Shown one piece after another: positions 30,201 through 64,000 of a stretch of 64,000 nt of DNA. A program made the position numbers and the translations under genes. This stretch comes from Schmidtea nova (taxonomy: Eukaryota), in NCBI GenBank assembly GCA_044892505.1, contig CM097882.1, positions 282,100,001-282,164,000 of the forward strand, given 5' to 3'. Every line of letters starts with the position of its first letter. Positions within the stretch are counted from its first letter, which is position 1. A model generated the notes under the pieces. That model worked only from the letters and a program-made list of their open reading frames with translations, was not told the origin of the DNA and made no database searches.

Positions 30201-31164
30201 GATTCATTTTGTGAAAAATGCACGGGATCGAGTAAAGCCTGAGATAATTAAAAATTGTTTTAATAAAGCTGGGGTTTACTTGGCCACAAAGTCAGACCAA
30301 TGTTCTTGTGAATTAAATGTTAATGGCGATGACAGCACAAAACAGCACAATACCGGTAAGTGTGATCAGTAAAGTGATAATGATATTATAGATATGGTAT
30401 AACCCAATACAACAATCCAGGCGAATTCCCACTCTGAAGTTGAAATTTCTGATAATTCTGAGGCGATAGTTTTATTGACAGAAGTTCAAAATACGTTAAA
30501 AACTGTGTGAATGATTTTAGGTTGACAATATACACGAAGGATGAAATATATAAACTACATTTTACTGAGAATTTTGTTGATGCTCTACTCTGAAAATTTG
30601 AAACAGACAAAACTTGCATTAATATGTTTAATTCACTTTTCGTAATAATTTTTTTATGAATGGACGTACAAAATACATGAATAAATCTTACTTATTATAT
30701 TTTCATTGCTTTTGTCATTATTTACATCATACAGAATTAATTGTTATCTAGTAATAGGTATAATTTACACTTACAGTTAAAATGAATTGCGTTGTTTATA
30801 TTTTTATATCTTACATTAAATAATTTCAAATAATTTTAAACAGCAGAATAAATTTAAAATAAATAAAAAATGTTTATTTTATTTTGGAAACATGGGGAAT
30901 ATCTTCAAAAAAGTACTAATTTTAACAAATTCCAATATAAATTTTAAGAACTCCACTTATAACCAATTTGGTTTGCTATATTCGAAATTACTTTTATAGC
31001 AAACACATTTAAATCAAATCATTGCGACGGTCCCTTGGTTGTATGCTGTACCGGGATTTCAGTGTATATTCAATTAAAATATATTTTATGACTGTGCCGA
31101 AATATTGTGTTATTGTTAATAAAAAAAATTTTGATCTATAGTCATTATGAGAATTATTGATAAT

Positions 31165-31226
<62 letters not shown>

Positions 31227-34137: not shown

Positions 34138-35243
34138 CAATAATTCCCATAATGGATGACCATAGATCAAAATTTCCTTAAATATTGTGTACTTATTTAA
34201 GGAAATTTTGATCTATAGTCATCCATTATGGGAATTATTGATAATAATATTAAAAAAGATCAAAGGTGAAATAAAAACAAAAAGATAATTATGATTATAT
34301 ATATTCATTTTTGAAGTAACTTGAAGTCGCATTATTATATTTACTTTTAGTTAATTCTTATTTCAATTGCTTTCTTTTTAAAATTTCAAAACAAATTTCT
34401 GAATTATAAACCGAATTCTGCTTTAGGGATAACTGATAAAAATTTTAATTTATTTATGATCATGTATGATATATTATTTTTGCTTCAAATAAAGCGTAAT
34501 TGCTAATAAATAAATTATAGAGTACACAGTTTTTCCCATTATACAATCAGCAAGTTGATAAGTTCTCAATTGAGAAATAACTGAATACATATTGTAAAAT
34601 ATAATAAAATGTAATACGTCATTTTAACTCGGGGAATTATAATTATTATTAATAAAGAGATTATTTCATATCGTCACTAGAAAAGTGAAATTGAAAGAAT
34701 GAGTCATATTTTTATGATGAGATTTTTAAGGAATTACTTTAAAATAAATTTTAAAATATTATTAGATTCTAGCAGTCAATTCTTGTATGTTTTCTAGTTA
34801 TCAATAATGTAAATTTATTATTCGGTAATGTGTATTAAAAATTTATTTTTAATATAATATATAATATAATATATAATATTTAAAAAATTAAATCATACGT
34901 CAGTTTCATTAAAGTGTTCTTTAACATTGTCAAGGATTGATGCACCAACGACATTTGGTTCACTAACAAACTCAGAATAATTGTCACCGAGTGCAGTTGA
35001 GTCCGGTTCGGTATTATTCTTGTTGTGGCTGCCACTGTCATAGTCGATCTCACAGTCGTCAATACTGGACGAGTTGCTGCTGTCGAGTGTATTGTTACTT
35101 TTTAAATCAAAACTATTCATTAAATCTCCATTTTCCATGTTATTAACATAAATTTCATCAATTTGTTCGGTTTTAATTGATTCGTCCACAGATTGTGTAC
35201 TCATTTCAAATTTATTTTGCAAAGTCATGCAAATTCTACAAAA

Positions 35244-41200: not shown

Positions 41201-44200
41201 TAAACAGTAAGAGGCTATACGTTGTCGGAAAATAACATTATTAATTTATTTTTTCAACATATCAGAACAAAATATTATCAAAAAATATGTGAAATTATTA
41301 AAATAGATTTACAACATTTAATACAAGATCAATAATATATACATTTCCTATTTATGTAATTTGTTAAAACAGGGTAAACAGAGGAAGATATTACCTCGTT
41401 TTGTTCCTTGCTGTAGCTTATGAGTGACTGCAAGAATAGACATGTAATAAATGCAAATTGAATACGGACCGATGGCGCAGTAACGCGTCAAGTACAATGT
41501 GAAGTCACATCATTCCCTAGGCACTGGCGACATAAATGTTCAAATAACATAAAAAATTACATATTTTTCCAAAATTATTTGAATCATTAATTTCTACTTA
41601 TTATGAACAAATTGAAAGTTCAGTTAAACCTATAAACAATTTTTTGAAAATTTTCTTGGCAGTCAACTTGTTAAAAATGATAAAATTAGATTTGAAATTC
41701 TATCCAATAAATATTTGGTAATATTTTGTTTTTTGGAAATATACTATCATTTTTAGCAGTGACCAATTTTCATTTTCTATTTAATTTTTCGGGCAATAGG
41801 TCAATATTTTTCGGAACTCTTGAAAAAGACTGCCGAAAATTCCTATTAAATAAATAAAAATATTGATATATAATCTGAAAAAAATAAAGGCAAAGGAAAT
41901 GACTAAAGAAATAAATATCCTAGATAAAAAAATTGTTCATTAGTCACCTCAGCACTAATTACATAGGTGTAAAAGTAAACCTTATGGCCCCGTGAGTTAA
42001 AATATAAATCTCGAAACCGATATTTTAGGATCTAAAAAAGATGTGGCATACTAAAGAGTGATAATCAATAAATCGAGGAAAATTTAAGACTTCACAAAAG
42101 ATTTCAGTGTTTCGTTATGATTGAGTCAGTGAGATTATCACATTTTGTAAACATACAAAATTCAAATTTCGTCATTCAATTACTTCTCCCATTGTCCTAA
42201 ATAGTCAATACCAAGCTTACTATTAAAGTTCTTTTCGTATGATTCTACAGAGTCTTTAGAAGTCGTATTTTCTACAGCAAATCAATGACTCAATAAATAA
42301 TAAATAAGTTTGGAACTTCAAATTTATATCCATTAACTCATTTCTGAATGATTAGAAGATCAACTCACGACTCCCTATGCATGCTATGTAAAGCAATTGA
42401 ATAATTTCATAAAAATACAGAATTCAACTCAATCAATTAGGCTTTGCTCTGAAATTTTATTCAAACAATATTCAATTTTTCTTTTCCTTCCATCCGTTGC
42501 AAACTTTTTTGCGGCACAATAGATTCCCGTGAAACAAAAAGGTCTGAGAACCAATAATATAAATATGACAATAATTATTAGTCTAGTAAGCGAACTAAAA
42601 CGAAAATAATTATAAAAAATATATTTTGTTTCAATAAATCACATTTTTAATCGTAACTTGCTAAGTTAATTTCAAAAAATAAATAATAAGGAATATTTTT
42701 AAAAGTAAAATAATGCAAAACCTTTTTCAAAATTATAATAAAAAACAATTTGTAAACTTACATCTGCTAAATTCATTTTTGAAATGAGAAACTGAGCAAA
42801 TTTTTGTAAATCTTCTTTGCTGAGCTTAGAGAGAGATTCTGATATTGGAGCTCTAATTTGAACATTTTTCGCCTCGTGTATCCTGTAGAGACAGGCCGCA
42901 ACGACATGGGAACACCAAACTTTGTCGACACACTCGAGAAAATCACAAGAACAATGACATGAAGTGATTCGACCCCGATCGAACGTTACACCGACTTTAA
43001 ATATGTTATTGTAAACCGATTGAACGCCAAGATTATTTCCATTATTGATTTGCTTCACTCCGTTATTTGTATTTGATGAACCGTTGACATTGAACTCGGA
43101 GTTCGAGTTGATAAACGTAGGAAAACCATTATAATTATTAGTATCATATTGGGACTGTTGAATTGCTCCATTCGATGACTGTGTTTGAGAATTGACGGGT
43201 CTTCTGGACACTTTTGCACTCAAATGAAATCCTTAAATCGAGAAAAATTTCATTTGCACGTTATAAATTATCGTAAATATAGCAAACAGGCATAAATAGC
43301 ATTTACATACAAAGATTGCAGAGAACATGAGATTTCCGAATAAGAATTTTCCATAACTATTACTCATGATAATTAATAATAATTATTCTGGACACACAAA
43401 TTAATGAAGGATGATTAATAATACATTATTTCAGAAATTATAATTATCTTAATAGATAGACTACATAGATGTAATGACAAATTTCAATTACAAATTGGAA
43501 TTCCGATTAGAATGGCTTTAGATTTTTTTGTTCTATGATAGTCGATCAGGGTTACCAACTCGACCATTTTCACCCGAAGACTTCGGGTTTGATGTGGTAA
43601 CTTCGGGTCTTCGGGTTTGTCAAAATATTTGAACTTACTTTTAGCTCAATCTTGAAAGTTTGTGAAGTACTAAATTTAGAAGTTGACGAAGATAAAATAT
43701 ATGATAAAATTGCTATTAATCAGATTCTTCCAAAGATTAGAATTACTGAAAATGGAAAAAATGAAGTTTTACAATTATGGGTGAAAATATTCCAGTCGAC
43801 TAATGGACTTAATAAAATTAAAAAAATAATGTCGAAAGTTTTAAGCATTCCGGTTAGTAATGCATTTATTGAAAGAATTTTTTCAATAATGAATTCCGTT
43901 TGGAGAGATGAAAGAAATAAAATGAGATTAGCGCTTATTAAAGCTGAACTTTCTGTAAGAATAAATTTCGACATGAAATGTGAAGATTTTCTTACATATT
44001 TAAAATCATCAGAACAAAAAAATTTACTTGAATGTTCATTAAAAACAACAAAATATAATTTAAAGAATTAATTATATTTTCTGAAGTTCCTAATTTTTTT
44101 ATGTTTTCTTATTGAATAAATTTTGTTGTTTTATGTTTTATTGTTATTGAATAAATATATTTTGTTTTATATTCATGTATTTATTATATATTAAATCTTC

Positions 44201-47200
44201 GGATGTAAAAATAATTTCTTCGGGTCTGACTCGTTCAAGAGTTGGTAACGCTGTAGTAGATCAATAAATTTGTGGATACGTTTAATTTATTTTTAATTAT
44301 AATTGCCATTTGAGAAAAAAGTCTAAATAAAAGATTTTACTGATAACTGTTTGAATTAAATAATCATTTAAATCCTTTAACTGATAACTGTCATTTGTAA
44401 ATTGAAAGATGTTCTATATTTATTACAGTAGGTCGTTATTTTAATACGCATACTAAATAAATATCTGTAACACTTTTGAGACGGCTTTCGAATACACGAG
44501 TTAAAGTTAAATTTTAAAGTAGTTTCTTTATTAAATATGGCAATAAATTTCAGCTTTAAATAAGGGATTGGGCTAGTATAAAATACAAACTGTTACATAT
44601 TTTAACCGAGTTCAGTGTAATTTCAAGCTTCTAGTATGTGTACCAGTCGTCTCTCAAAAAGATTAAAGAGTGACTCGTTCAATAAACAATTAAAGCAAGA
44701 CCTTGAGTTAGGCAAATTGATATTTTTCTCAGAGGTCACGTAGCTGTTTACCTGATCGTAGTGTTGTTACTAGACATCTCATTTAGTAAAATCTATTTTT
44801 TATTTTTCATTCCAGAAAACTTCTAAATTGCAAGGAATTTTTATTTATTGAAAAATATTCACAATCTTATTTAATGTTTTGTTCTACTCCAAGGCCTCAT
44901 TTAACACATTTTCAGTTTTATTGTTAATACAATTTATGTTATTAGTTTCCAGCTATTTGATTAGTTGTTTCGTCGACATCAATATTTACTCAGCTCCAAA
45001 ATAAACAAAGATACATAAACGAATAAATATTCTTGTATTTCACTTTGTATGGTGATTTTACTTTATATTTTTTGATATTGGCATAATTTGTCACGAAATA
45101 AAATTGTATGATATCAATTTTAAATATAAATTTTCAAGTAATATAATTTTAGTATTAAGGATAAAATTCTTAAAAATTGAGATCATGCCATCAACCAATC
45201 CTGAAGCTCCTAATCTATCACCATACAGATTTTAATATTAATATTTAAGATATTCCAACAATTTCTCAATACTGTGACGAATATGTGCTGTTTAATGCTC
45301 CAAGAAATATGAAGGCGATTGATATAAATGACCCAAGGGAAAAGTTTCCGAGAAAAACTCAACTGTCGACATCTGAAGAAAACTAGCTGCGGCAGACTTA
45401 TCTCTACCTACAATCGACCAGAGATCTTTGAACATGTCTAACACCAACCAGATAAGAATCGATTATCACTCAATGATTGAATACTGCCAATTTCGGTCTT
45501 AAACTGGACCCTATCTTTCCACCATTAAACATATTTCACCAAGAACGCTTTCATATTTTCAAGGCATATTTATCGTCATATCGACATACATAAACCAAAA
45601 TTATAATTATCTTTTTGTTTCACCTTTGATCTTTTTTATTATTAATATCAATAATTCCCATAATAGATGACTATAGATCAAAATTATTTTATAAACAATA
45701 ACACAATATTTCGGCACAGCCTTTATCAAGTGTGTATACATACTTGATAAAGGCTGTGCCGAAATATTGTGTACTTATTTAAAGAAATTTTGATCTATAG
45801 TCATCCATTATGGGAATTATTGATATTAATAATAAACCAAAATTAAAATATTATATTTTCCAGCAAATGCGTAATATTTAGCATATTTTTGGAAATTTTA
45901 TTATTGACAATCCTACTAAGCGTCACTTGTCGAAATAAATTTGATTCACATTTAAGTGCGTTTACCGTATACATATGTCAAGTAGAAGTGTTCCTATGGT
46001 GTGTTTGACGTACGGGTGAAAAGAAATTACCATTTTCTATGAAAATTCAAAACCTATTGGTTTGTTTGACCTGTGTTTGACTTATATATACGTCATCGCC
46101 AATTTTAATTACTCGCCCAGAAATACATTTTTGAAAATAAACTACTTGCTTAACTGGTTAATCACTAATTTACCGATTTAAGTATATAAAATAAGACAGT
46201 TGAAATAAAATTTAAATTCGATTTGAAATTAAAATTAGAAATAGGAAAAACTAACATTTATGAAAAATTTGATTGCAAAATTGGTAAACTTAGATTAAAA
46301 TATAATAACTAAAATGATGTTTAGAATAAAAAAATTTTAATTATACAAGTTTTTTGCCGATAGATGCACAGAATGAGATGACTTTTCTATGAAAATTTAA
46401 CGATATATTTCATTTGACACATTATACATATATTATGTCATTATTGATCCCACGTAAACTGGCGAGAAAACGTTCATAAAAACCTTCAATGAATCAAATC
46501 AGATAAATAATAACAGAAATTCTCTCTACATTGGATTAGAGCTAATTTTACACTTAATGTGTCGCTTTTTGACAACGAAATCCATGATTAATCGCTAAGT
46601 TTTAAATTGAAATATTTAATTGATGCTATATATTGTTAAAATTTAGAAAACAACGTAAATTAATCAAGAAAATAGGCTTATTATTAAATAATTTTAAAAA
46701 CGAATTTTTAAGCAAAATTTTTAAAGATAATTTATTACATAATAATTGTATAATGTTATTAAAAACGAATCATTATAAATTATAAGATGAAAAACGATAA
46801 TGAAAGAAAATATTAAATAAGAAAATTTTATTTATTTTTAACCACCAAATGTTAACAATTAATATGAGCTTTCGACAGACAAAAAAATCTGCAAAATATT
46901 AAAGATATTATGATTGAATGAAAAATCATAATTCTAATATACTGTAGAAATGCTAATTCTGTGGTACAGCAATCGTTTGCCATTTCGCGCTTCGAATTTT
47001 ACGGCTTCACTCTATTGTGATCTTTTTTCAAATATATATTCTAATCACAGTACATTATCAACACAATGCTCACGAGAATTGTATGCATATAATATTGGGT
47101 ATAATAGTGACTTGGTGGGTTTAATTTCATGTTAATACCCTTATTTAAAGTGTCTTAAAAATGTTTTCTACGTTCTGACTACGAAAATCTTCGATTTATT

Positions 47201-49810: not shown

Positions 49811-51228
49811 GATTTAATGACTTATAAATATAGCTTCTCGCCATAAACTGCAGCTGTCTTATTTAAGGCATTCAAACAAACGTTCTAAATCTAAGTTAAT
49901 TTTATAAATTATTAAGAAGGATTTTACTGTATTTTTACGTTTTTAAATAAAATTAATTTGTTTTCAATTAATTTAATTATTTTTATTTATAGAAATGATT
50001 TTTGGATATAAACTTGTGATAATTCAATTTTTTAGAAACTAATAATTATTTGTTGATTTTGAAATATAATTCATTTTTAATTTTATATACATTGATAATA
50101 TATACTTTAGCGTATAATTAAAGTTGTTTTTATAAATCAAGGCATTTTTATTATTTTGACTACTGATAACAAGTTTAAAAAGATTATTTCTAGAATATGG
50201 AAATGATGGTAGTGCTGATGTTTTGTAGGTGGTTTAATAATCAGACTTTAATACTTCTTTTGAAACACATAAAAACTAATTCCCTACTGTTGCCATCCGT
50301 TGCTTGGCAACGTTGGTACTGTACCAAGGGGTTGAATGTGTCTGCAAAATGTGAGCTGCATCTTCGCGACTGCTAATGCCCTGGCAATTCATTAGGTCCA
50401 AGTACCACAGATAGAAGGTTATTTTTACTTTTTATTCTGGACCCATCATGTATCTAATTTATCCTTACTTTCCAAATATCTTTGAATAGAAAATAATTAT
50501 GATATACTCTAATAGAAACATTTATATTTAAATGTTTCTTTCTTTTAGAATTTATTTACACTCTTCCTCAGCCTAATTACTGTTAGACAAAAATGGAATT
50601 CTTTTTAAATAACCTGGTAATACAGTATGTAGAGAGGGCGCACAAAGTGAACTTAAAATGTGATTGAGAAAAACACCAAGTAAAACACAGTAATAACAAA
50701 ACACATGAAATAATTAATTAAAATCAATTAAAATGAACAAAAGCGCATTAGGTATACATGTTAAAAATACACGCAGAACATAAAACACTAATTATGCAAT
50801 AAAATAACAAACTCGGAAAAATTAACATATTGCTGGTTTATTGGTGTTATTTACAACGGAGATTCTAGTTGATATTAAATGTCAGGGTAATCTCGCCAAC
50901 ATAAACACGCTTTCCCCGCTGATACCCATGATGTGTCCCTAACTACTCATCATGTTGGTACTGTATCAATATTGTGAAATGATGAGGCAGGTGAGCAACC
51001 TTGCGGCTACTATTCCTTCATTTATTCACGGGTCCACCACTACCAATAGAAGGTTTATGTGGATTTTTTACGGCCCCAATTGATCTATACGATTGATCTA
51101 TACGAATTGATCTATCCCTGGCCTCCAAATGAATCGCGTATATTATTAATTTGCTCAATCACTCACTTATTTCATCACACATTACTCGCCAATCCACAAC
51201 AAAAACAAGACCTTCGAACATAATACAT

Positions 51229-52490
51229 TTATTTCCCTAAAAACATGGTTGGATTTATAATGTTGATTAGCTGCCTCTCAGATAAGCCACTGAGTAGATC
51301 AACTTCGATACCAAGCCTTTCTGCATACGCCCTTCTCTCTCGTCGACGTTTAGCCACAAGACGGTTCCTTTTCTCTGTCCTCGTCAGCTTAACCTGGGCC
51401 GGTTGTGCGGTCGATGTCTCTCTTTCGTGTGTCGTACTAACGACCTCCTCTGTCTGCGTCGCCATATTCGTATTAGTGGGGGTTACCCATCTATCAAACG
51501 GACTCACTCGGATCAGTGGTTTCAACTGTCCTTCGAAAAACTTTCGATTCGATGCCCGTAAGTAATTATTCAATTCCAGCCTGGCAGCGGCTGTTTCTCG
51601 AGCCTGCTCCTCCAGCGCTCTTTCTGCTCGATACCGACGCTGCTGTATCTCTTTCACTTTTTCGGGATCGAACCATGTTTTATTTAGGGTATCAATTTCC
51701 ACTGTTTGACGACTTATATGTCGCTCTAAGAGTGTATTCGTCTCTGCAATTGTCGCTGATTGTCCGTATCTACGTCTTTCAGTACTCGATCCATCTACAA
51801 TTTATATGGATATTATACAGGCTATATCGGTTTTACAAGACAGCTCCTACTCAACGCGCGATTCCCTTTTTATCATACCTCTTGGTCACTACATTTATCA
51901 TTCATCCATTCATTCCACATCAGTCAACATCAATTTTCGTCCAAGTTTACCCAATCTTGATTACATGGGCTTTCTGGTTTTCGAATACCAATTGGATAGA
52001 AGTACTCATCGTTCGGTTTCCAACATACCCGGTCCTGGTGGATAAAGATCTCTCAGAGTTGAAGGCTTGGCAGCTAATTTGCCTGATTTGCACATATACC
52101 CCAAGGTGAATTTGTGTACGGCCTGCGCTCTTCTGTCTGGACATCCCTCGGTTGGTCCAATAGAACAAATCCTAATCTTTGTAGAACATGTCCCGGAATT
52201 GACATGAAACTAATCATCCAACGAGGTGTGCCAATTTGATCCTCCAGTTGCAGGAACCATTTCCGTGATGACATTGATATGGATGGTCCTGACGGCGGCT
52301 ATTGAGCATCTCCTTCCCATCGAATATTAATTGTGTACGAGTCATTTCTCGCATTGGCCGTTAGATTACTATGGCTCCGTTTAAGATATCGTAGGCATCG
52401 TTCGGCTCGTGCTTTTATCAATGGGGGTATCCGTGAGGTTTCTCTCGGCTTCCGAATCTTTTGGGCTACAGATTTCTTTGATGTTGTCAT
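51229..52490 (-). pseudogene. Degenerate long ORF of unknown function
   Basis: ORFs 52299-52490 and 52074-52274 plus downstream sequence share one frame with scattered stops. A frameshift leads into the frame of ORF 51229-51702 (basic, coiled-coil-rich). Confidence 0.5.
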
Positions 52491-53735
52491 CTCTACAACG
52501 ATTAATACGCATTAGTTCCATCATGATCTCCCTTCACGTCAACTTTCGGAAATACCTCAGCTCACCCTGTATCTTGCTGGCGCACTGACTACCTTTGGAC
52601 ACAACATTCAATCATCTCAATCGTCCCTTCATTCATACCACATTATATCACCCGGTCAACATTTCGTCACGCATTCCATTGAACATCCTGTTTCCCACTT
52701 TACCATTCGTCTCGTCGTTATGCTTTCGCACTCACCATCGTCACAACATCATCTCCTCATTGTATTAATGCTAATCGTTATGCCTTCAAACATCGTTCAT
52801 GCCGTGCTGATTGTTTTGTTATTAGTTGTGATGAAACTTTATTTCGGTATCGATCTATCAAAACTCAATTCAGGCATTCGTTCGCAATTCGTACCACATC
52901 ACCAGCAATCATATTCAATCATGTCTCCTCACATGTATTTTGAGTATGTACTCATTTCTGTCAAGAACGTAATTCACTTGGTCTTTGTGTAGAAATCAGC
53001 ATTAGAACGTTTTCTGCTAGTTGTATCTCTGGTGCGTGTGATTCTAACCTCTGCATGCAAAGAATCGTTACTATCCCTACCTGGAACTCATGCTCCTCAC
53101 CGATGCTCTCAGTAGATTCAACATTCATCTTCAATCATCTCTATGAGCATCCCTCCCATATCGTTTAGTCGCATTGATCTACGCCGCATCAGTCAACCCC
53201 GGTAAGGTGCTGTCTGAGAGGCCCAAATCTCCTGTCAGGTACGATGACTTTCGGGATGTCCTATTCATTTTAGTTATCATGAGGGTTTAATATGAAATCA
53301 CAATAATAAACACTTACACACCTTTATTACCAATCCTTCAATAGGTTTACAATTTACTTCCAAGTTTGATACAAAATAACTTTCAAGGTTCAGATCGTTG
53401 TCAATAAAAATTACCACTTGGTAAAAATGACTGACTGCACTGAATTTGGCTGCCGTATTTATACTTGTTTTTGCCGCCGGCCAACCAATCAGATTTCAGG
53501 GTGTGTGTGAGTTTGTCATTGATTTCATTTTCAATACCCACCATTACGTTTTTAATCTGATGAGTTTGTCTGTCGATGCGTAACATTTTTTCACTAATAT
53601 TTATTTTAGTTTTGTTGTATTCTTTGCACCGCTCACCCCCGCGTTGTTATCTTAAGTAACTTAGTGTTTCACTTGTCAGATTTATGTCATTTGTCTATCT
53701 GGTTACTTCTCGGGTGTTCTACTCTCGTCTCAGCC

Positions 53736-54041
53736 ATGCTCGGCAATTTTGTTTTGCATGGTTGGTTTTGTGCTGGTAAGTTTTATTACTCACCATTATT
53801 AATGTTATTTTATTTCAGGCTTTACTGCTCTCCAATTTATCGGTGGTAATTTTATTACTGTCGGTACATTTGATTGCTGACATATTTTTGACAGCTCTCA
53901 TTATCGTTCTGTTGGTTGCTATCTATTTCGTTCCGGTTCGGTGGTAAGTTATGTATTTTATTACCGCTTTATTATTACGTAATTTGTTTCAGGCTCGTTA
54001 CATTTACTGCGTTCTGCTTGTTATTGATGTACCGGTTGTAA
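53736..54041 (+). CDS. Four-exon micro-gene encoding a 54-aa highly hydrophobic peptide, antisense to the retroelement
   Basis: Exons 53736-53775, 53819-53845, 53895-53943 and 53993-54041. Introns of 43, 49 and 49 nt have GTAAGT/GTAATT donors and TTTCAG/GACAG acceptors. Spliced frame: MLGNFVLHGWFCAGFTALQFIGALIIVLLVAIYFVPVRWLVTFTAFCLLLMYRL*. CCAATCAG upstream at 53485. Confidence 0.55.
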
Positions 54042-54486
54042 TTTAGATTTTTCTTTATTTATTTGTTTTTAATATTTATTTTCTTGTTTTTAAATTGATT
54101 TGCCTGGCCCAACATCACTGGGGGTCCCCTTAAAGTTGCGTCCCTCAATTACATACATGCACTTACGTCAAAATACATAAAAAGTTCGTGACAGAGTTCA
54201 CATGCAAAACCACATAAGGTGGTTTTGATATTTCTCCAGTTGATATTTCTCTATCAGTCGTTCGCGTTGTCGTACTTCGTAAAACTGACATGCCATCACG
54301 TCGTTTAATTCTATGGTTCTTCGTTCTAATTCCCCTTCGCATTTCCTTTTGATTTCTCTTTCTACTGCTTCTTGTTCGGTTATTGATTCGTTTCTCGATT
54401 CCTCGTCCGTTATAAGTTCGTTTACGTTTTCCATTATTGACGATTTTTACACTTTATTTACAGGGTCATTCACTCCACTACTCCAA

Positions 54487-55890
54487 TTATCCTTTCGTTG
54501 ACTTCTTATTCAACATTGTCGTGCTTGTTTTCTTTTCGACCTCCAACTCCACATATAGGATGTCGTCGTACAACATTTCCCATTTTTTACTTTGTACGGT
54601 GAATTTTGGTTCTCCTGTTGACAATGAACATTTTGTGGTTGGTCTTTTGTAAGCTTCGTGCTTCCCATTGATTTTGAATATTCTCACTATCGTTTCTCTC
54701 GAGTTTTTGATCTTCAACGTCGTCCTTGCTTTTAATGGCCATTCCAATATGTCGTCGTATCCACCTTTGCACAACGCAAAGAATAATGACACATGCGTTT
54801 CTTTTCCTGGTCCATCTCTATTTGGATAAATTCTCATTCTGACTTTGTATCCATTTTTCCACAGATAGAATGGTGGACTTGTCACTGACATTTGTCTTCC
54901 TGTTTATGCTGCTGTGAACTTATCATTGAAGTTCGTGATTTTCCACACGTATGGTGCAACAGGTAGGCTTTTTATGTCTTTCACATATCGAATCCATATC
55001 CAATGTCGTACATTTTCCCTTTGCCAAGTTCTCTATGACTGTGATTTTCTCCATCATTTTCTCTCTGGTGAGCTCGAATTGCTCTCTGGTTTCCAGCAAT
55101 AGTTCCGTCATTATCCTTTGGGATTCTATTTCCTTTTCCAACTTCTGTATTGTTTGTTCCATTTTGCTCACATTCTCTGTCAACATCTCCACGTGTTGTA
55201 CAGTTTCCGTTTCTAAATGTTCTTTCATCTCTTTGCTTGTTTTCTTTACTTAGCATCCCTGTTTACTCCATACACACTTTCTTGGTTTCGATTCACACTG
55301 CTCCCAAAGTTTTCCGTAGTATCACTTCCTCTGGGATTCCACAAATGTTTGGACATCTACCTCTGAATTTTTCACACACCTTCTCTCCTGATACGTTGAG
55401 GTGCTCTGTTTTGATTATTTCTCTCATTTCTCTTTATTCGCAATGTTGACACTCTACTATTTCTGCCTTGCACTCCTTCTTGTGATTTTCCAACTGTTTG
55501 ATGGTTGTCGTCTGTTGACATTTTTCGCATATTGTTTTCTTGTTCTCGCATTTCTCCAGATGTTGTCTCAATTCGATTATTTGTCCCTTCCATTCGCATG
55601 GTTGATTTATAAACTTCGTTTTTATCTTCCAGATCTCCTTTTGGATTGCTTTGTCTGGTTTCATTTCATTGATCAGTAGTTTATCGTCAAATTCTGGACA
55701 CTTCCTTGTCCCACCTTTATTGATTATTTGCAATATACATTTTGTGCACATTCTGCATCCACACTCTGCTTGTCTCGGCTTCAACAACAAGTTTTTACAC
55801 TTTACACATATTACGGTTAATCCCAATTGTCGATTCTCTCTACGCAAACTTTCGATTGTTTGGTAATCTGCTTCACTTTCTGCTCTTATT
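54487..55890 (-). pseudogene. Intronless TRAF-like coding region (RING, TRAF Zn fingers, coiled coil, MATH), interrupted by stops and frameshifts
   Basis: CVKCKNLLLKPRQAECGCRMCTKC; CEWKGQIIELRQHLEKC; CVWSKQGC..EMKEHLE..QHVEML; PYVWKITNF; SPPFY..GYKVRMRIYPNRDG.GKETHVSLFFAL.KG.YD.IL.WP. Confidence 0.9.
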
Positions 55891-56621
55891 CTACAATTTT
55901 AATTCTACAATGATATTTACATCAAGCTTTCATATTTCTGATTTTTCTGGTTTCGTTTTATACACATATATACAATTTCCCGCTTTATTTCACTACACAT
56001 CTTCAGTCGAGCCTGGCTCTGGATATACGTCTATCTCATTTACAATCCAGTTTGTCCAACTATCTGGTATCTCTTCCACTTCTTGTATCGTTAGCCGATT
56101 AATCTCTTCTGCTTGCCAGTCGTTTACTTCTTTTAGCATCTGATTTTCATTCTGTAATTCATTTATCTGCTGTTGTTGAATCTCAATTTTGTTCATCGCT
56201 TCAAAATTGCAGTTGTAACTCTCGGTTAGTAATTGCGTCTTCACCGTCAATTGGCTTCGTAATTCATTTACAGTTCTGGCTAGCATGTCACATTGCACTT
56301 TCTATCTAGTCATCATGGATATTTCTGAAGTTTCTTGGTTCATCGTTTTTCTGGATTATATGCATCATTCTCTTTTTCTCGTTTTTACGTTTTATAATAT
56401 TTATACCCATACGTATACGGTTATGCATTGATTTTTACATTACTATTTACACGCATATTCCTCCCTCTATACAACTGTTACTGGTTTTCCTTCATAACGC
56501 TTCTCGTCTTCGATTTGTTCCCACATTTCTTTGCATTTCGATCTTCTTCTAAGTTCTTCTCGTACTTTCTTTGGTAGCTCCATGCTGTAATTCATGACCT
56601 TTACATCTGGCCATTGCACTG

Positions 56622-58400
56622 TTATAGTCTAATTCTCATGCCATACATCCAACATACTACCATAATCGTTATTAGTGGTATACACGCTATGAATACTCCC
56701 ATGCTAATCAATCCCATTACTCTTTTGCCAATACTCATTTCTTTTGTTTTGCTTTGATTTATCATTACACCATATTGACTTTTCCATTCAACTTTCCATT
56801 GTTCGTATAGTTGCTGTCTCTGTCTGATTTCTTCGATCACTTTCTCAGGTTTCCATCTTTCTTGACGATTTGGTATTGTTTCTTCGGTCTCTATTCGTTC
56901 TCTCATCTGACTCAATTCTCTGAATTCTAGTCTTCTGATTCTTCCTTTTATCATCGTATTTCTTGACGTATAATAGGTTTCGAACTTTTCTTGTTGGTTT
57001 CCTTGTGCATCTACTGCTTCTATTGCACAGACTTCGTATTCTGCATTTGTTTTTAACTTCTCCATTTTGACTTCTATAATTCCTTCTTTTCCGCTTCTCG
57101 TTGTCCTCTGACAATTTCTTGGAGACTTTCCCACGTTATTTGGCATTAGTTGCCAATATATTTCTAAGACTTTCTTATGGATCTTCCATATTATCAGAGT
57201 TGTCGATTCTGGTTTAACTTCTTTTTCCGTTGTTACCTCATTCATCGTTGTCTGTTGAGTTCGTTAGTTACTAGTTATAGTAGTCCTTCTTGACTCCTTT
57301 CTTTTCGGTGGACTTCTCATTTCAATTATTCTCGTTCCGTTGATTCTCTCTGGTGTCTTGTACAATTTGCACTCTAGGCTTCTTTGTATTATTTCTCTTC
57401 TTCTTCTGATTACACAAATTTCGTATGTCTGTCCGACTTCGAATCCGTCTAGTTGAAATGGGATTCCTGGTTCTCTCGTTTTACATTGTGGTATTATGCC
57501 GCTGGTTGATAGTCCGATATATTTTCTCCAACACATTCCTATCGTCCTTGGGCTGACGTTTTTTATTTCTACTGTCACTACTTCGTTTGCTCTCGCTTCT
57601 TTGTTTTGCTTCTGTCTTTTCGGAAACTCGATTGTCTCCTTTGGTTTAAACACTTTACACTCGCTCGTTCCTGGTCTGTTTCCGTTTGTTGCCTTTTCCA
57701 CGAGACATAGTTCACATACTTTATCATCTCCATTTCGGTTATTTCGATCGCTTTATTTGTCTCTGCCTTTCGACTTTCTTTAGTTTCGCTGAACCCAATT
57801 ACTTCATTGTTTCTTCCCCAACATCTTCCGTCCGTTGTTCGTTTGTCTTTGATGTTAACAAACGTCATCACGCTGATATCTATTTCTTTCTCGATCCTCT
57901 TAATTAGGATTAGTATTAATGCTACGCATATCAATTCTGGTTGAAATGTTAAATTCCCCGCTGGACTTTTAGCTGCCCTTTCTTTCTCTGTTTGGTTTCC
58001 GGTTACCTCTTCCGCTTCGATTTGATTCGTTCGTCTTTCTGGTTCTACTTCTGTTTTTTTCGTTGTCTCTTTATTTCTTTTCCCAATGCCGTTTTGTATT
58101 TTCAGCGCTCTCGTTGCTTTGTACAATTGACATGCCGTTACTTGAGGTGCTTTTGGTTTTCCTCTCTGATTTACTGCGCATATTATGTATGACTTTTCTT
58201 TCTCCAATCCTTTGATTTGGATGACGTCTCGTTTCAAATCAGACAATATACACTTCAGCGGTTCTTTCTTCTTCATATTCTCTTTCCAGCATATTCGTTC
58301 GCGCATTTCATCTCTTCTGATGATTTCCAACTTGGCATATTGTTTCTCTGCTTCGCCTTGTCCGATGAGTGTTATTAATTTTGCGAGGCATAACATTTCT
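56622..58400 (-). pseudogene. Four FN3-like modules followed by a transmembrane helix
   Basis: Repeated motif: IKGLEKEKSYIICAV; ITEMEMIKY(E)LCLV (frameshifted); LDGFEVGQTYEICVI; MEKLKTNAEYEVCAI. Hydrophobic GLISMGVFIACIPLITIMVVCWMYGM near 56640-56718. Confidence 0.55.
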
Positions 58401-59512
58401 GGTCTTAAAAGTAGACTCCCTGTTCGTTTCCCATAGTTTGTGCATTCATCCTTTGTTCTATAGTTTGCTCGTTCCTCGGCTTCTCCTTTCTTGTCGTTTC
58501 TCGTTGGTTTCTGTTCTTCTAGATTTTCTTTTTTATCGTATTCTGTTTTTCCTTTATCGTTGTCTCCGCCGTTATTCTTGTCGTCGTCATTTTTATCGCC
58601 ACCTTTGTCGTCGTAATCTCTGTAACCACCCCCTGGTCCTTTCAAAATGTCGTCCTCGACATTGATCTCTTTTATCATTCTTTCATACACTTGAAGTGCG
58701 AGTGTGCTAAACTCAAATTCTCGTATTTCTGTGTCTTTGGGTGGTTCTGTATTCTCTCGTTTACATTGCTTGATTGTTTCTGTAGCATTTGCCCATGAAT
58801 TTATATACATTCTGAATAAGTCCATCCATCTTCCTGTTCGTTCATGTTCCTTTGTATTATTCGTAAATCTCAGATCACTTCTTTTCATGAACTCCTCTAC
58901 TATCTCTGACTTTTTGTGTCTTAGTAACGTGCTTCTGATACACCAATTCTGATTTTGTTCCATATGGCCATTAATCTTGAATACCGGTTTTTTTGTGACT
59001 GGATTTATCCATGTCAACAACGCTGTTGTATTCTCGAGGTCGTGTATCATCACCACTAGACTGAATTTTCCCCCGTTATTTGCCAGATATTCGATCTCAT
59101 CTTGCTTCTTGATTGATTTTATGAAGTTTATCATTTCGAAGTTATTCCACTGTATCGCTATATCCAAGATGGAGTTATTCTTCCCATTCTTTCCTTCGAC
59201 CTTGGCTCCTGCTTTGTATAATTTATTCAACACTTTCCGCTTCGTCTTTTTCCTTGCTGCAATTATCATAATCGTATCTCCGTTGTCATCAGTCGTATTC
59301 ATATCTGCTTCACATTTGACTATTATTTTCGCAACTTCTATAGCCTCATTGTCTTTCTTTCGACGTAATGCCCAGTGTATCGGCAATCTTCCATCTTTTG
59401 GTAGTAGAACTTCCACTGGCATTTGACTTTTGATCGTTGTTATATCGCTTTCGTTATATTCTCCTTGTGCATATATGTGCACTTTCTCTGTAATTGATCC
59501 CAATATCTCCAA
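57578..59512 (-). pseudogene. Ankyrin-repeat cluster 2 and downstream cargo (644-aa segment of polyprotein)
   Basis: DGRLPIHWA..; ADMNTTDDNGDTIMIIAA; GAKVEGKNGKNNSILDIA. Confidence 0.8.
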
Positions 59513-59796
59513 AGAGTTTTTATTCTACTTGAATTCTGGTATACTTTCTTGTGCCTTTGCCACTATTGCTTCTAATTTCTCTTGATAATCCGCTTTTGCA
59601 TTAAACAACACTGCTTTGCTCCTAATTCGTGTTTGCATCTGTTTCATTCGCTGATCCTGATATACTGCTTGTCTGAAGAATTGTCCGTATTTCAATGCTT
59701 TCACCAGATCCTTGTATCGTTGGCGTATTTTTTATGTTTCTTTTGGATATCGTAGAAATGTTCGAAACTCATATCCGGATTCCACTGTTTGTCGTA

Positions 59797-60924
59797 CTAT
59801 TTCTTGATTAATCCGAATAATTCCTTCTTCCTGTCTTCCAGTCTGTATTCTTTAGGGTTTTCACTGACTCGTAATATATCTCTTGATATCAAGACCGCGA
59901 GTGTTTTTGGATCATATGGTACTTCTAGTAGATGTTTCAGTAACGCATTTTCTTCATACGTAAACACTTCGTTACAATCTACTACCCATGAGTCTCCTTC
60001 CGGTCGTTTCCACTTCAACAACATTCTCCAGGTTTTACTGTTGCTTACGCTGATTGCTTGTCTCATGATTGGACCTCTGGATAATTCATCGATCTCCCAC
60101 GTGGCATTTTTCGTGATATACTTAAGTATTCGGTGATTTGCTCTATCGATTGCATGAATAAAGAACGTTCGTCCTTCTTTATCTCTCGTTGTCCAATTTG
60201 ATCTGGTGTTCCCAAATAATTCGACTATTTCCTTGTTTCTCCCGTGAATCGTTATCATCATGAGTGGGGTAATTCCTTCCCAATTTACTTTGTCGATTTC
60301 TCCTCCACCTTCGAGTGTTATCTCGATGATTTCTTTTACTTTTTCGTTTCCGCTGTGCTTGATTGCGTTATGCAGCACTGTGTTACCGTCTTTATCCTGT
60401 AGACTCAATGTTTGTGGGATCTCTTCTAGAAGCGTTCTTGTCATTGGATGCGCTGATCTGTCTTTCGCATATTCCATTACGTTTTTCCGCACTTCTGTCA
60501 GTAGGTCGAAATCATGCCACCATTTCCATTCCGGTACTATCTCTCTGGTCTTCTTTGCCAGTTCCTTGATATCTACTGTTTTTCTTCGGTTGTCTTCTAA
60601 ACTTGTTTGCGGCTTTTGTTGTACTCGCAACATATTAATTCTTGCCGTTTGTGATCTCGTCATCACTCGTTTCTCTGGTAGTAAAGTTGCGGTCTTTGGT
60701 ATTTTCTTGCATCGACATGCGTTTACATAAATTGGTCTCACCAATGAATTGTTTACTAGTCTCACCCGTACATTATTCTCGTTGACCGTTGTTATTTCGT
60801 ACGGCCCTTTGCCTGGTCGTTGCAGTTTCTTGACTGTACCGGGTATTATTTCCGGTGTCTCAATTATCACCCAATCTCCAATTTTTAGCTCAAGTGCCTT
60901 CACATTTCTCTTCTGATCATGCAA
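59797..60924 (-). pseudogene. Integrase C-terminus (GPY) fused to ankyrin-repeat cluster 1
   Basis: LKIGDWV..KKLQRPGKGPYEI, then DKDGNTVLHNA, NWEGITPLMM, DKEGRTFFIHA. In frame with integrase ORF 60979-61392 across a single TAA. Confidence 0.85.
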
Positions 60925-60978
60925 GTCCTTGTAACTCTCTTGGTAGAATTTGATATTGAGTTCTGCCGTTTTCCAGAT

Positions 60979-62141
60979 TTATTGCATTCTTTCTTTGAAC
61001 TTTGTAACATAATCGTCAACCTCCATGTAATGCGATAATGGCGGTTGGTATTCCAAGTCAATTGGTAGGTTGCAATCTCTTCCGTACATTAATCGGAATG
61101 GACTTAGCTTCGCCGCCGCATGTATTGACATTCGATATGCCATTAAACACAAGTTAATATATTCGTCCCAGTTTGTTTGATGTCTACTCACATAATTTGA
61201 TAGCATGCGTATCAATGTTCCATTGAACCTTTCTGTTTGACCGTTCGTTTGTTGATGGTATGGGGATGTTCGCAATTTCACAATTCGGAAGTAATTCGTA
61301 ACTTCATCCAATATCTTACTCATGAAATTCGTTCCTTGATCCGTTAGGATTTTCTTTGGTGTTCCGTATCTGCAGCATATCTCTTCCACCAATATTCTCG
61401 CGACTGTTTTTGCTTTTTAGTCTGGTATTGCGAATGCTTCTGGGAACTTCGTCAGATAGTCCGTGACTACTAATATGTACTGATTTCCTTTTAGACTTTC
61501 TGGTAATGGTCCAACTACATCCATCGCTATCGTCTACATTGGTTCTGCATTGATTGGCATTGGCTTTAATGGTGTTTTCCACTTCGTTCCGGTGTTTTTT
61601 CTTGTCGCACAGATTAGGTAATTCTTTATCCACTCCTTTACGTCATCTTCCATGGTTGGCCAAAAATACTTTGTCTTAGTCTCACGATTGTCTTTTTTGC
61701 TGACATATGTCCACCTAATTTTCCGTCGTGGTACTGAGTCATGATCTCTTTTCTTCTATTTGCAGGTAAGCACATCAATCTCCGTTCTCCATTCTGTATT
61801 AACAACCATCCTTTTTCCATCACGTATCTGTGTTGATACTTCTGCATATGTTCGCGTAATACTTGGTTCTTGCTGAATATTTCCATATCCTTTTACTTGA
61901 TGATCAGTCCCAACTCGCCATCTTCAAGTTGATCTTTCTTTAGCTCTTTGAAGTCCAAATCTTCGACTATTAGCACGCATATCTTGGGAGCATCCAGATT
62001 TACCAACTCTGGGAATGTGAATCTTGACATGCAATCTGCGTTTGCGTTCGCTTTTCCTGCTTTGAACTTTATGAATGGCGAGTATTCTTGTAATTGCATC
62101 GCCCAACGCATCAATCTACTTGATGATGCTGGTTCTACCCC
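60979..62141 (-). pseudogene. Gypsy pol remnant: RNase H end plus integrase
   Basis: ORFs 61893-62207 (retroelement part up to about 62141), 61638-61886 and 60979-61392 carry canonical Gypsy RH and IN motifs with stops and frameshifts. Confidence 0.92.
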
Positions 62142-62647
62142 AAAAGGCAAACAGACAAAAGGCCGACACGAACACAAGGCCGACAGACAAAAGGCCGACA
62201 CGGACAAAAGGCAGACAAATAAAAGAACACTTGTAATAGCAAAAACTATTAAATAAAATCGGGGGATTCCTGGAAAATCTTTGATTTAGAATTTGATTTA
62301 GAGAATTCTAAATCAAAAACTTTCCAGGAATCCCCCGATTTTATTTAATAGTTTTTGCTATTACAACTGGGTTTTTTTGTTAAAAAAATGGGTTTTTGTT
62401 AAAGAGGTAATTATTATTTTAATTAGTTTAATGAAACGAAACATATATTTATATTTATTTATTTATTTTCCTTCATGGAATAGCTCACAATTTAAATTAT
62501 TTCTAATTTGTAATTAAATTTTTTATAGAACAAAGTATTTATAGCTAATTTTTATTTATTTTTTTTTATCCGTAAATATTCTGCCTTTTGTCCGTGTCGG
62601 CCTTTTGTCCATGTCGGCCTTTTGACCATGACGGCCTTTAATCCGTA
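62141..62647. mobile_element. MITE/foldback element with 15-bp tandem units (GGACAAAAGGCCGAC) as inverted ends, enclosing a hairpin; abuts the truncated pol
   Basis: Left array 62141-62214 and right reverse array 62579-62647. Internal hairpin at 62231-62366 with about 63-bp arms. Confidence 0.8.
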
Positions 62648-63233
62648 TACGTTGTAATTTCTTAATACTCATTTTATTGTTTTTATCTGAGAAAACTAAA
62701 GATTATCGATAATGCTATATATTTTTTTGGGTTATTATTATTATTATTATTAATATTATTGGCGGACACAGGATAACCCGGCCTTTTATTATTATTTTCA
62801 TGTTGGCAAATATGCCTGTAAAATGATTTTAAAAATAATAAATTAGAAATCATAAAAAAATTCAAAATTGAAATTATAATAAAATCAATCGTGATTTTAT
62901 TATTTAGATATGAATTTATAGTTGAATGGGAATGTGATTGTTTTTTTGTATCTAAAACAGTAAATAATGATAAAACAATAAGAATTACAGGTTTCTATTC
63001 TAGAAAGAATAAAGATTCCTATAATATGTAGTAAAACTCAGTAAGATGGTTTAGTTGAAAGGATATGCCAATTTTAAAAGAAAATCAATAAAATATTATT
63101 GTTGATCAAGTCTAAATCGGCTGATCAAGTTCAATATTCAGAATGTTATGTACGGGTGAGCTAAAGTTAAATTTTCTATAAAAGTTTATTGATTTTTTAT
63201 AATTTTTAGATTTCAATTCAGAAACTGTAGTTC

Positions 63234-63577
63234 TCCATCGTTTTGCTCTGTTGTTTATCTCGTTGGATGCTTTTATTTCACTGATTGAAGAATTTAGGGT
63301 GAAGTGTTGCTTGTGAGTTTTGTTTTAAATAAATATTTTAAACTTGTTTTCCATTCTCTTTCATGAACTTTTTATGAAAATGTTTAATGTTGGATCGTCC
63401 TTTTATCCATCGTTTTGCTCTGGATTTATCTCGGTGGATGCTTTTATTTCATTGATTGAAGAATTTAAGGTGAAGTGTCGTTTGTGAGTTTTGTTTTAAA
63501 TAAATATTTTAAACTTGCTTTCCATTCTCTTTCATGAACTTCTTTACGAAAATGTTTAATGTTGGATCGTCCTGTTA
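63234..63577. repeat. Tandem duplication, 2 x about 172 bp
   Basis: tccatcgttttgctctg...tggatcgtcc starts at 63234 and again at 63406, about 90% identical. Confidence 0.9.
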
Positions 63578-64000
63578 TCTCTCAAAGATACTGGCGAACT
63601 TTGTTTCATTAATATGACATTAATTATCCCAGTGTTTTTGTTGCAAAGAAATAAGTTAAACTATTTGTGATCTAGCTACATAAAAATCTTAGCCATTTTT
63701 AACAGCTAAAACTCTATCAATACTCAAGAAAACGCTTTTCTGTCACTTTTCTTTTCTCATTTTATGATATTTTCACTTCTTTATATGTAGAACTTGTATC
63801 TGTTATTTAAAGAATATTTTACTTTGAAAAACAAAAACAACAAAAAATAAATAAAAACTTAAGTTAAGGAAAATTAAATTAATATAACAATCTTGCGGAT
63901 ACTCCTAAAGCCATTCTCTCTCATCTACGCAAAGTATGAGGTAGGAATTGAAAGTCGCTTTGAAAACATAGGGTTGGAGAATTCGAGAGAATCCACTACG

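What the first reader, a model, noticed from the sequence alone, without database searches (positions are those of the whole stretch)
54198..62141. Giant Gypsy retrotransposon whose pol polyprotein appears to extend into a full innate-immune signalling cassette (ANK-ANK-FN3x4-TM-TRAF)
Seen: after the RNase H and integrase motifs the minus-strand frame continues for about 6.7 kb. Integrase is in frame with ankyrin cluster 1 across one TAA (60978 to 60924 is 54 nt). Several later ORF breaks are single stops or frameshifts with coding-like sequence on both sides. The A-rich strand bias is uniform across pol and cargo, and no introns were seen. Established: ordinary Gypsy elements end shortly after integrase or env. 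From memory, giant planarian Gypsy elements (Burro) carry extra host-like domains such as BCL2-like, BIR or ART. I do not recall a TRAF+ANK+FN3-TM set. Inference: a retroelement lineage captured a receptor-like module, IkB-like ankyrin repeats and a TRAF, potentially to manipulate NF-kB/JNK or apoptosis signalling.
Basis: partly seen in the sequence, partly recalled or inferred. Interest (0 to 1): 0.92.

Follow-up and report, generated by a model that had tools for sequence, protein, structure and literature searches.

The report
Decayed Gypsy fragment carrying ankyrin/TRAF cargo
This is a dead, front-truncated copy of a Gypsy-type retroelement in an AT-rich animal genome whose integrase reading frame runs on into host-like ankyrin, fibronectin-like and membrane-anchor modules and is followed by a TRAF-like gene; the feature is real, but ankyrin and TRAF cargo is already published for the giant 'Burro' elements of planarians.

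Summary
The observation largely holds. On the minus strand, about 62.14 to 50.9 kb is one compositionally distinct block. It is A-rich with G>C and 36-45% GC, against 27% GC around it. In order it holds an RNase H/integrase linker motif, broken integrase pieces, two ankyrin modules, three clear FN3-like units with a possible fourth, a C-terminal membrane helix, a stop-dense spacer, a TRAF-like gene (RING plus zinc fingers, then MATH), a small ORF, and about 3 kb of non-coding-like sequence.

The integrase C-terminal module and the first ankyrin cluster share one uninterrupted 393-codon frame, so that fusion is real. All cargo segments share the integrase's base bias; host exons on the same strand do not.

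Three limits apply:
- The copy is cut at its 5' end by a foldback repeat. The window holds no gag, protease, RT or LTR pair, so 'giant' cannot be verified.
- The copy carries at least 22 stops and frame changes.
- The membrane helix ends its frame and a stop-dense stretch follows, so the TRAF-like gene is more likely a separate accessory ORF than the tail of a receptor-like polyprotein.

Burro1/GYPSM1 is already described with ankyrin and MATH_TRAF_C domains (PMC6431247). No relatives could be retrieved. Interest is modest.

The parts
50900..62140 (-). Whole retroelement fragment. It is 5'-truncated, and the lower bound is approximate, taken from composition.
   Evidence: GC is 36-45% with an A-rich minus strand, against about 27% GC in the flanks. 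No other copy is in the window.
60754..62117 (-). pol remnant, one broken gene. It holds the RNase H/integrase linker motif (about 62019-62117), integrase H2C2 zinc domain (61662-61766), the C-terminal half of the rve core (61255-61413) and a GPY/F-like integrase C-terminal module (60754-60891). It is broken at least 4 times (2 in-frame stops, 2 frame changes). Everything upstream is missing.
   Evidence: Pfam; translations; break count.
56631..60753 (-). Post-integrase extension of the same reading frame, treated as one broken gene: linker, ANK module 1, ANK module 2, a low-complexity stretch, FN3-like units and a C-terminal membrane helix. It is broken at least 5 times (3 in-frame stops, 2 frame changes).
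   Evidence: Stop density is 0-3 per 600 nt, against 5-9 in non-coding parts.
60106..60390 (-). Ankyrin cluster 1 (about 3 repeats), in the same open frame as the integrase C-terminal module.
   Evidence: Pfam Ank_2 E 4.4e-10, plus Ank_4, Ank_3 and Ank.
59117..59395 (-). Ankyrin cluster 2 (about 3 repeats). Together with about 100 residues downstream, it aligns collinearly with the ANK1 module.
   Evidence: Pfam Ank_2 E 1.7e-7; BLASTP of the two frames gives 238 aligned residues, E 0.002.
58070..58342 (-). FN3-like unit 1.
   Evidence: Three-unit alignment A1; all five PDB hits of the A1 profile are FN3 domains, E 0.038-0.76.
57333..57605 (-). FN3-like unit 2.
56958..57230 (-). FN3-like unit 3.
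56631..56726 (-). Hydrophobic membrane helix at the extreme C-terminus of its frame (tail-anchor-like).
   Evidence: Kyte-Doolittle 19-residue maximum 2.64; AF2 helix with pLDDT 74-90; translation.
55900..56624 (-). Stop-dense spacer that contains a 102-codon coiled-coil-like open frame (55996-56301).
   Evidence: 6 minimum breaks in 0.73 kb, or 8.3 per kb, against 10-13 per kb in non-coding flanks. Only weak coiled-coil Pfam hits.
54490..55898 (-). TRAF-like gene, one broken gene: RING plus TRAF-type zinc fingers (55440-55808), a presumed coiled coil, and a MATH/TRAF-C domain (54526-54900). It is broken at least 5 times.
   Evidence: PDB: TRAF6 RING-ZF E 8.9e-13; TRAF1/5/3/2 MATH E 3e-21. Pfam TRAF-mep_MATH E 3e-24. 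Break count.
54198..54434 (-). Small ATG-initiated 78-codon ORF directly after the MATH domain, with no known family.
50900..54115 (-). 3' non-coding-like region, possibly including the 3' LTR. Its bounds cannot be set from one truncated copy. It contains a 190-codon open frame (51232-51801) with a basic stretch.
   Evidence: About 10 breaks per kb; sequence; purine-run scan inconclusive; bZIP_1 E 0.007, below cutoff.
62141..62639 (.). Foldback repeat with inverted 15-17-nt tandem arrays. It abuts the cut 5' end of the element.
   Evidence: (I17).

Best explanation
The block from about 50.9 to 62.14 kb (minus strand) is the 3' part of one decayed, 5'-truncated Ty3/Gypsy-type LTR retroelement. 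It is of the cargo-carrying kind known from planarians (Burro-like), lying upstream of a host ZSWIM8-like gene.

In the ancestral element, the pol reading frame did not stop after integrase. It ran on through two ankyrin modules, which look like an old tandem duplication, then through three to four FN3-like units, and ended in a C-terminal membrane helix. A separate TRAF-like ORF (RING, zinc fingers, coiled coil, MATH) followed, then a small ORF and the 3' non-coding/LTR region.

Shown here: the domain content and order, the integrase-to-ankyrin continuity in one open frame, the shared base composition, and the decay.

Inferred: the cargo came from host genes long ago. In live relatives it served to bind or divert host adaptor proteins of TRAF/NF-kB-type and cell-death signalling, with the ankyrin-FN3 extension anchored to a membrane and the TRAF-like protein acting as a decoy or rogue E3 adaptor. 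This particular copy has no function now.
For: - Integrase H2C2 and rve, with the linker motif upstream.
- The integrase C-terminal module and ANK1 lie in one 393-codon open frame.
- There is a 648-codon open frame. Composition-matched shuffles need about 96 breaks over the 7.65 kb, against 22 observed.
- A/T is 1.9-2.5 with G>C in integrase and in every cargo segment including MATH. Four host exons on the same strand have A/T 0.97-1.24 and C>=G.
- GC stays at 35-42% throughout, with no intron-like AT-rich gaps.
- The TRAF identity is strong.
- There is FN3-like profile evidence.
- The membrane helix is at the frame end, followed by a stop-dense spacer.
- Published precedent: Burro1/GYPSM1 carries ankyrin, MATH_TRAF_C, BIR and BCL2-like motifs. 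A Dugesia (Girardia) tigrina relative has MATH_TRAF_C in an accessory ORF instead of the polyprotein (PMC6431247).
Against: - There is no RT, protease, gag or LTR pair in the window, so the element's class rests on integrase pieces, and 'giant' is unverified.
- No relative of any cargo piece was retrievable. Recurrence of the cargo in other copies is therefore untested.
- The GPY/F-like module is my reading of the translation; no tool named it.
- In the published description of Burro1, MATH_TRAF_C lies upstream of protease, not downstream of integrase. FN3 and a membrane tail are not mentioned there.
- The stop that follows the membrane helix could be a later mutation rather than the original ORF end.
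- The host organism was not identified.
Confidence: 0.72

Rival explanations
1. The block is a composite of two or more different mobile-element fragments that landed head to tail. One would be an integrase-ANK-FN3-TM fragment and the other a TRAF-carrying fragment, for example the gag-proximal part of a Burro-like element. The TRAF would then never have been downstream of this integrase in a working element.
For: - A stop-dense stretch of 0.3-0.7 kb separates the membrane helix from the coiled coil and RING.
- In the published Burro1 description, MATH_TRAF_C lies between gag and protease.
Against: - Strand, GC and A/G bias are the same on both sides.
- No LTR-like or gag-like (CCHC) sequence lies between them.
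- The literature already reports that such modules switch between polyprotein and accessory ORF.
Confidence: 0.13
2. This is a chance neighbourhood. A truncated Gypsy integrase fragment sits next to unrelated host genes or processed pseudogenes for an ankyrin protein, an FN3 membrane protein and a TRAF.
For: - All cargo domains are of host type.
- The protein searches found only generic ankyrin proteins.
Against: - The integrase C-terminal module and ANK1 share one open frame.
- Cargo composition matches integrase, not host exons.
- There are no introns, all parts are on one strand, and decay is similar throughout.
Confidence: 0.06
3. This is a former host gene that had domesticated an integrase and fused it to ankyrin repeats, and is now a pseudogene.
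For: The integrase-ankyrin continuity.
Against: - The RNase H/integrase linker motif upstream shows that the integrase was still part of a pol frame.
- The base bias is retroelement-type throughout.
- Decay is heavy.
Confidence: 0.03

Closest known systems
Burro / GYPSM1 giant Gypsy-like LTR retroelements of planarians (Jurka 2007; Grohme et al. 2018; reviewed in PMC6431247)
   Same: - It is a Gypsy-type element in an AT-rich animal genome.
- Host-like ankyrin repeats and a MATH/TRAF-C domain are carried on the element's coding strand.
- Cargo modules can lie either inside the polyprotein or in accessory ORFs.
- Decaying copies with stops and frameshifts are reported.
   Different: - In the published text, MATH_TRAF_C of Burro1 lies between gag and BCL2-like/env/protease, and in the D. 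tigrina relative it is in an upstream accessory ORF. Here the TRAF-like gene follows integrase and the ankyrins.
- A TRAF RING plus zinc fingers, FN3-like units and a C-terminal membrane helix are not mentioned there.
- BIR, BCL2-like, SUMO-like, env-like and dUTPase parts are not seen here, though the window holds only the 3' part.
- No sequence comparison with Burro was possible.
Chromoviruses and other Ty3/Gypsy elements with extra domains fused after integrase or captured downstream of pol (e.g. the orchid elements with an m6A demethylase domain, PMC9289625; capture downstream of pol reviewed in PMC6431247)
   Same: The pol frame extends past the integrase GPY/F region into an added protein module.
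   Different: The added part here is about 4 kb of several host-type signalling and adhesion modules, not a single small domain.
Planarian secretory cell nidovirus (PSCNV), PMC6211748
   Same: It is a planarian-infecting agent whose giant polyprotein acquired a host-related ankyrin domain and fibronectin-type domains. These are proposed to modulate virus-host interaction.
   Different: It is an RNA virus, its fibronectin domains are type II rather than type III, it has no TRAF, and it is unrelated in replication.
Cellular TRAF proteins (TRAF1/2/3/5 MATH domains; TRAF6 RING and zinc fingers)
   Same: The domain order is RING, zinc fingers, then MATH. Sequence matches are significant.
   Different: It is intronless, A-rich, lies inside a retroelement, is preceded by a coiled-coil-like frame, and is broken. 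The stretch between the zinc fingers and MATH matches nothing.

Membership tests
Ty3/Gypsy (Metaviridae-type) LTR retroelement | Integrase with an H2C2 zinc domain, an rve catalytic core and a GPY/F C-terminal module | tested here: met
   Integrase_H2C2 scores E 1.6e-7, above cutoff. rve scores E 1.7e-4, below cutoff, with only the C-terminal half seen. The GPY/F-like stretch is read from the translation only and was not named by Pfam or PDB.
Ty3/Gypsy (Metaviridae-type) LTR retroelement | Reverse transcriptase placed before integrase (order PR-RT-RH-IN), with gag | tested here: inconclusive
   Only the RNase H/integrase linker motif survives. The element is cut by a foldback at its 5' end, and the 1.9 kb left in the window holds nothing retroelement-like.
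Ty3/Gypsy (Metaviridae-type) LTR retroelement | Paired long terminal repeats with target-site duplication | tested here: not met
   No direct repeat pairs involve the block. The 5' end is missing, so this says the copy is incomplete, not that the family lacks LTRs.
Burro-type giant planarian Gypsy | The host is a planarian (Dugesiidae) | not testable with these tools
   The organism was not identified. The window's ORFs are not in the protein collection. The AT-rich metazoan genome with a ZSWIM8-like gene is compatible.
Burro-type giant planarian Gypsy | Internal region of about 25 kb with a polyprotein of several thousand residues | tested here: inconclusive
   Only about 8 kb of internal sequence is present. 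About 5.5 kb of it reads as one decayed frame.
Burro-type giant planarian Gypsy | Host-like accessory domains (ankyrin, MATH_TRAF_C, BIR, BCL2-like) | tested here: met
   Ankyrin and MATH/TRAF are present. BIR and BCL2-like were not found in the part that survives.
Burro-type giant planarian Gypsy | Sequence relatedness of RT/IN to Burro1-4 | not tested
Fetching DNA of relatives was left out (see referred steps).
TRAF family | N-terminal RING plus TRAF zinc fingers and a C-terminal MATH (TRAF-C) domain | tested here: met
   TRAF6 RING-ZF aligns over 123 residues, E 8.9e-13. MATH scores E 3e-24 in Pfam and 3e-21 against TRAF1. The gene is broken at least 5 times.
Fibronectin type III domain | Match to the FN3 profile or fold | tested here: inconclusive
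   There is no Pfam fn3 hit even at E<=10. Single sequences find nothing in the PDB. A profile of the three internal units finds only FN3 domains, at E 0.038-0.76. The AF2 model is unusable.
IkB-like ankyrin proteins | Six or more ankyrin repeats with specific similarity to IkB/BCL3 | tested here: not met
   Each cluster has about three repeats. Database hits are generic ankyrin proteins at 21-37% identity. No specific comparison with IkB was made.

The most novel reading that the evidence does not exclude
This copy may represent a lineage of flatworm Gypsy elements whose 3' half has an architecture not described for Burro. The pol frame would be extended by duplicated ankyrin modules and FN3-like units ending in a tail-anchor helix, followed by a stand-alone, complete TRAF (RING, zinc fingers, coiled coil, MATH) accessory gene. 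That would show that whole host adaptor genes, not just single domains, move between polyprotein and accessory-ORF positions in these elements.
Probability: 0.3. Interest if true: 0.55.

Novelty: new member of a known kind. Interest (0 to 1): 0.33.

Why it matters
Retroelements that carry host signalling and cell-death modules are rare outside planarians, and they blur the line between transposon and virus. A catalogue of which modules they carry, in what order, and whether inside pol or as separate ORFs would show how such cargo is gained and reshuffled. This copy adds a plausible FN3-like/membrane-anchor module and a full RING-to-MATH TRAF to that catalogue. It is a dead fragment, and the general phenomenon is already published.

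Tried and rejected
Searches that found no useful relative:
- Protein search with the 393-codon frame: only 3 weak generic ankyrin hits.
- The 648-codon frame against 1.84 billion representatives: swamped by generic ankyrin proteins. None of the 150 best shares integrase or TRAF parts.
- The non-ankyrin part of the 648-codon frame: nothing.
- The MATH frame: nothing in its length range.
- Exact look-ups of ten window ORFs and one host ORF: not in the collections.

Structure and family searches:
- AF2 without an alignment for the FN3/TM frame and the integrase-C-terminus/ANK1 frame: mean pLDDT 53 and 35, unusable except for the membrane helix. No fold search was run.
- Pfam at E<=10 for FN3, RNase H and the GPY/F module: nothing.
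- PDB searches of the stretch between the zinc fingers and MATH: nothing.

Searches within the window:
- Plus-strand ORFs in the block: no family.
- Other copies of the element: none.
- tRNA and Rfam scans: empty.
- Polypurine-tract scan to place the 3' LTR: ambiguous.

Other:
- Grohme et al. 2018 is not held in the paper library.
- I considered and rejected the idea that the membrane helix links an outside FN3 receptor part to an inside TRAF part. The frame ends right after the helix, and no signal or second strong membrane segment precedes the FN3-like units.
Full report
**Setting.** The window is AT-rich (about 27% GC outside the block) and comes from an animal. A ZSWIM8-like gene with long introns lies on the minus strand between about 14 and 43 kb, with SWIM, TPR_ZSWIM8 and ZSWIM4-8_C hits. 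No tRNA or Rfam family is present. The finding lies in a block from about 50.9 to 62.14 kb that stands out by GC of 36-45% and a strongly A-rich minus strand.

**What is there.** Read 5' to 3' on the minus strand, the block contains the following.
- It opens with the conserved motif that links RNase H to integrase in Gypsy-type pol genes. This is my reading of the translation; Pfam reports no RNase H.
- An integrase H2C2 zinc domain follows (E 1.6e-7), then the C-terminal half of the rve core (E 1.7e-4, below Pfam's cutoff).
- The next open frame has 393 codons. It starts with a stretch that fits the GPY/F C-terminal module of Gypsy integrases, at the usual distance from the core. This is my reading; Pfam and PDB did not name it.
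- After a linker of about 130 residues, the same frame holds ankyrin cluster 1 (Ank_2, E 4.4e-10). Integrase and the first ankyrin module are therefore joined in one uninterrupted frame.
- A 648-codon open frame follows, with ankyrin cluster 2 at its start (Ank_2, E 1.7e-7).
- The two ankyrin modules, each with about 100 residues that follow it, align collinearly over 238 residues (E 0.002). This suggests an old tandem duplication.

**FN3-like units and the membrane helix.**
- Pfam finds no fn3 even at E<=10.
- Single-frame searches of the PDB find nothing.
- AF2 without an alignment failed.
- Three units of about 90 residues do align with each other on a shared skeleton.
- A profile of these three units, searched against 177,635 distinct PDB sequences, returns five hits at E<=10. 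All five are FN3 domains of tenascin or fibronectin, with a best E of 0.038.
- A possible fourth unit is only hinted at by two insignificant half-matches in different frames.
- I therefore call the units FN3-like, with weak support.
- The last of these frames ends, a few residues before its stop, in a strongly hydrophobic helix. Its Kyte-Doolittle score is 2.64, and it is the only confident segment of the AF2 model.

**The TRAF-like gene.**
- After a spacer comes a frame whose residues 31-153 align with the RING and first zinc fingers of TRAF6 (E 8.9e-13).
- About 0.5 kb further on lies a MATH/TRAF-C domain. It scores E 3e-24 in Pfam and 3e-21 against TRAF1, TRAF5, TRAF3 and TRAF2.
- The stretch in between matches nothing and would correspond to the coiled coil.
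- A 78-codon ATG ORF follows.
- About 3 kb of sequence comes next, with non-coding stop density. It contains one 190-codon open frame with a basic stretch.

**Is it more than chance, and is it one unit?**
- A dynamic-programming count gives the minimum number of stops plus frame changes needed to read from the upper edge to the end of MATH. The result is 22 over 7.65 kb, against 89-105 in twenty composition-matched shuffles.
- By gene, the minimum counts are:
  - pol remnant: 4 (2 stops, 2 frame changes), plus loss of everything upstream;
  - post-integrase extension down to the membrane helix: 5 (3 stops, 2 frame changes);
  - TRAF-like gene: about 5.
- Base composition ties the parts together. 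On the minus strand the A/T ratio is 1.9 in integrase and 2.1-2.5 in every cargo segment, with G>C throughout. Four host exons on the same strand have A/T 0.97-1.24 and C>=G.
- GC never drops to the intron-like level inside the block.
- The plus strand holds nothing recognisable.

- First, the copy is a fragment. At its upper edge it abuts a foldback with inverted 15-17-nt tandem arrays. The remaining 1.9 kb of the window holds no RT, protease or gag. There is no LTR pair, and I could not place the start of the 3' LTR. 'Giant' is thus unverified.
- Second, the stretch between the membrane helix and the RING has 6 minimum breaks in 0.73 kb. That is 8.3 per kb, against 10-13 per kb in clearly non-coding sequence and 1.6 per kb in the frame upstream.
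- The helix also sits at the very end of its frame. The simplest reading is that the long pol-derived ORF ended with a tail-anchor-like helix and that the TRAF-like gene was a separate downstream ORF.
- A receptor-like topology (FN3 outside, membrane helix, TRAF inside) is not supported. No signal sequence or second strong membrane segment precedes the FN3-like units.

**Comparison with what is known.** The review by Arkhipova and Yushenova (PMC6431247) makes the following points.
- GYPSM1/Burro1 of Schmidtea mediterranea carries AIR1-type zinc fingers, an Smc-like coiled coil, MATH_TRAF_C, BIR and ankyrin repeats. Burro2-4 also carry a BCL2-like motif. All lie in an ORF of 4,873 residues.
- A relative reconstructed by those authors from Dugesia tigrina has MATH_TRAF_C in an accessory ORF instead.
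- D. japonica holds decaying fragments with stops and frameshifts.
- The cargo may meddle with host apoptosis and ubiquitination.

Three things are not mentioned there: FN3-like units, a C-terminal membrane helix, and a TRAF with its RING and zinc fingers placed downstream of integrase. In Burro1 the MATH domain is described between gag and the BCL2-like/env/protease region. A planarian nidovirus with host-related ankyrin and fibronectin type II domains is a parallel case (PMC6211748). From memory, and untested here, some large DNA viruses of fish also encode both an ankyrin protein and a TRAF-like protein.

**What could not be done.**
- No relative of any piece could be retrieved. The protein searches are limited by query length, and the source genome seems absent from the collections.
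- The key test, whether other copies carry the same cargo in the same order, is therefore open.
- The organism is not identified; a planarian is my inference.
- I did not scan public DNA collections for other copies of the element.

- In one search my own script printed the bounds of all stop-to-stop open frames on the minus strand of 48-64 kb.
- In one search a script printed break counts per 600-nt sliding window.
- In my working I walked through frames by coordinate.

Together these show roughly where frames end. I used the bounds only as references for single-frame queries.

**Verdict.** This is a real but dead fragment of a cargo-carrying Gypsy-type retroelement. The integrase-ankyrin fusion is genuine. 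The TRAF-like gene belongs to the element but was probably a separate ORF. The phenomenon is known from Burro elements, so the find is best filed as a new member of that kind, possibly with a variant architecture. Interest is modest.

Noticed in passing
62141-62639: This is a foldback element. Inverted tandem arrays of a 15-17-nt unit (62141-62225 and 62583-62639) flank an inner near-perfect palindrome (62221-62376). It sits exactly where the retroelement is cut off.
   Followed up: partly
63230-63579: A 171-bp unit is repeated twice in tandem (92% match).
   Followed up: no
14093-43223 (minus strand): This is a host ZSWIM8-like gene with long AT-rich introns. Its exons are seen as ORFs with SWIM, TPR_ZSWIM8 and ZSWIM4-8_C hits. 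The retroelement fragment lies about 8 kb upstream of it on the same strand.
   Followed up: partly
43652-44071 (plus strand): A remnant of a hAT transposase dimerisation domain (Pfam E 2.6e-5) lies next to the first ZSWIM8-like exon.
   Followed up: no
27776-28764; 28071-28243; 31120-31180; 34180-34296; 45593-45843: These are MITE-like short repeats that share terminal sequences. One is a roughly 1-kb inverted structure with 15-nt tandem arrays around an N-run.
   Followed up: no
24-807: Two tandem arrays lie at the window start: a 13-nt unit (24-205) and a 120-nt unit (208-807).
   Followed up: no
51232-51801 (minus strand): A 190-codon open frame lies inside the otherwise non-coding-like 3' part of the element. 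It has an arginine/lysine-rich stretch. The bZIP_1 match is weak (E 0.007, below cutoff) and there is no PDB match. It could be a further accessory ORF or chance.
   Followed up: partly
59800-60520 and 58805-59524 (minus strand): The two ankyrin modules and about 100 residues after each align collinearly (E 0.002). This hints at an old internal duplication of a larger module than the ankyrin repeats alone.
   Followed up: partly
892-1878 (minus) and 4122-4574 (plus): Two sizeable ORFs (328 and 150 codons) flank an N-run and have no Pfam family. They are possibly remnants of another mobile element.
   Followed up: partly
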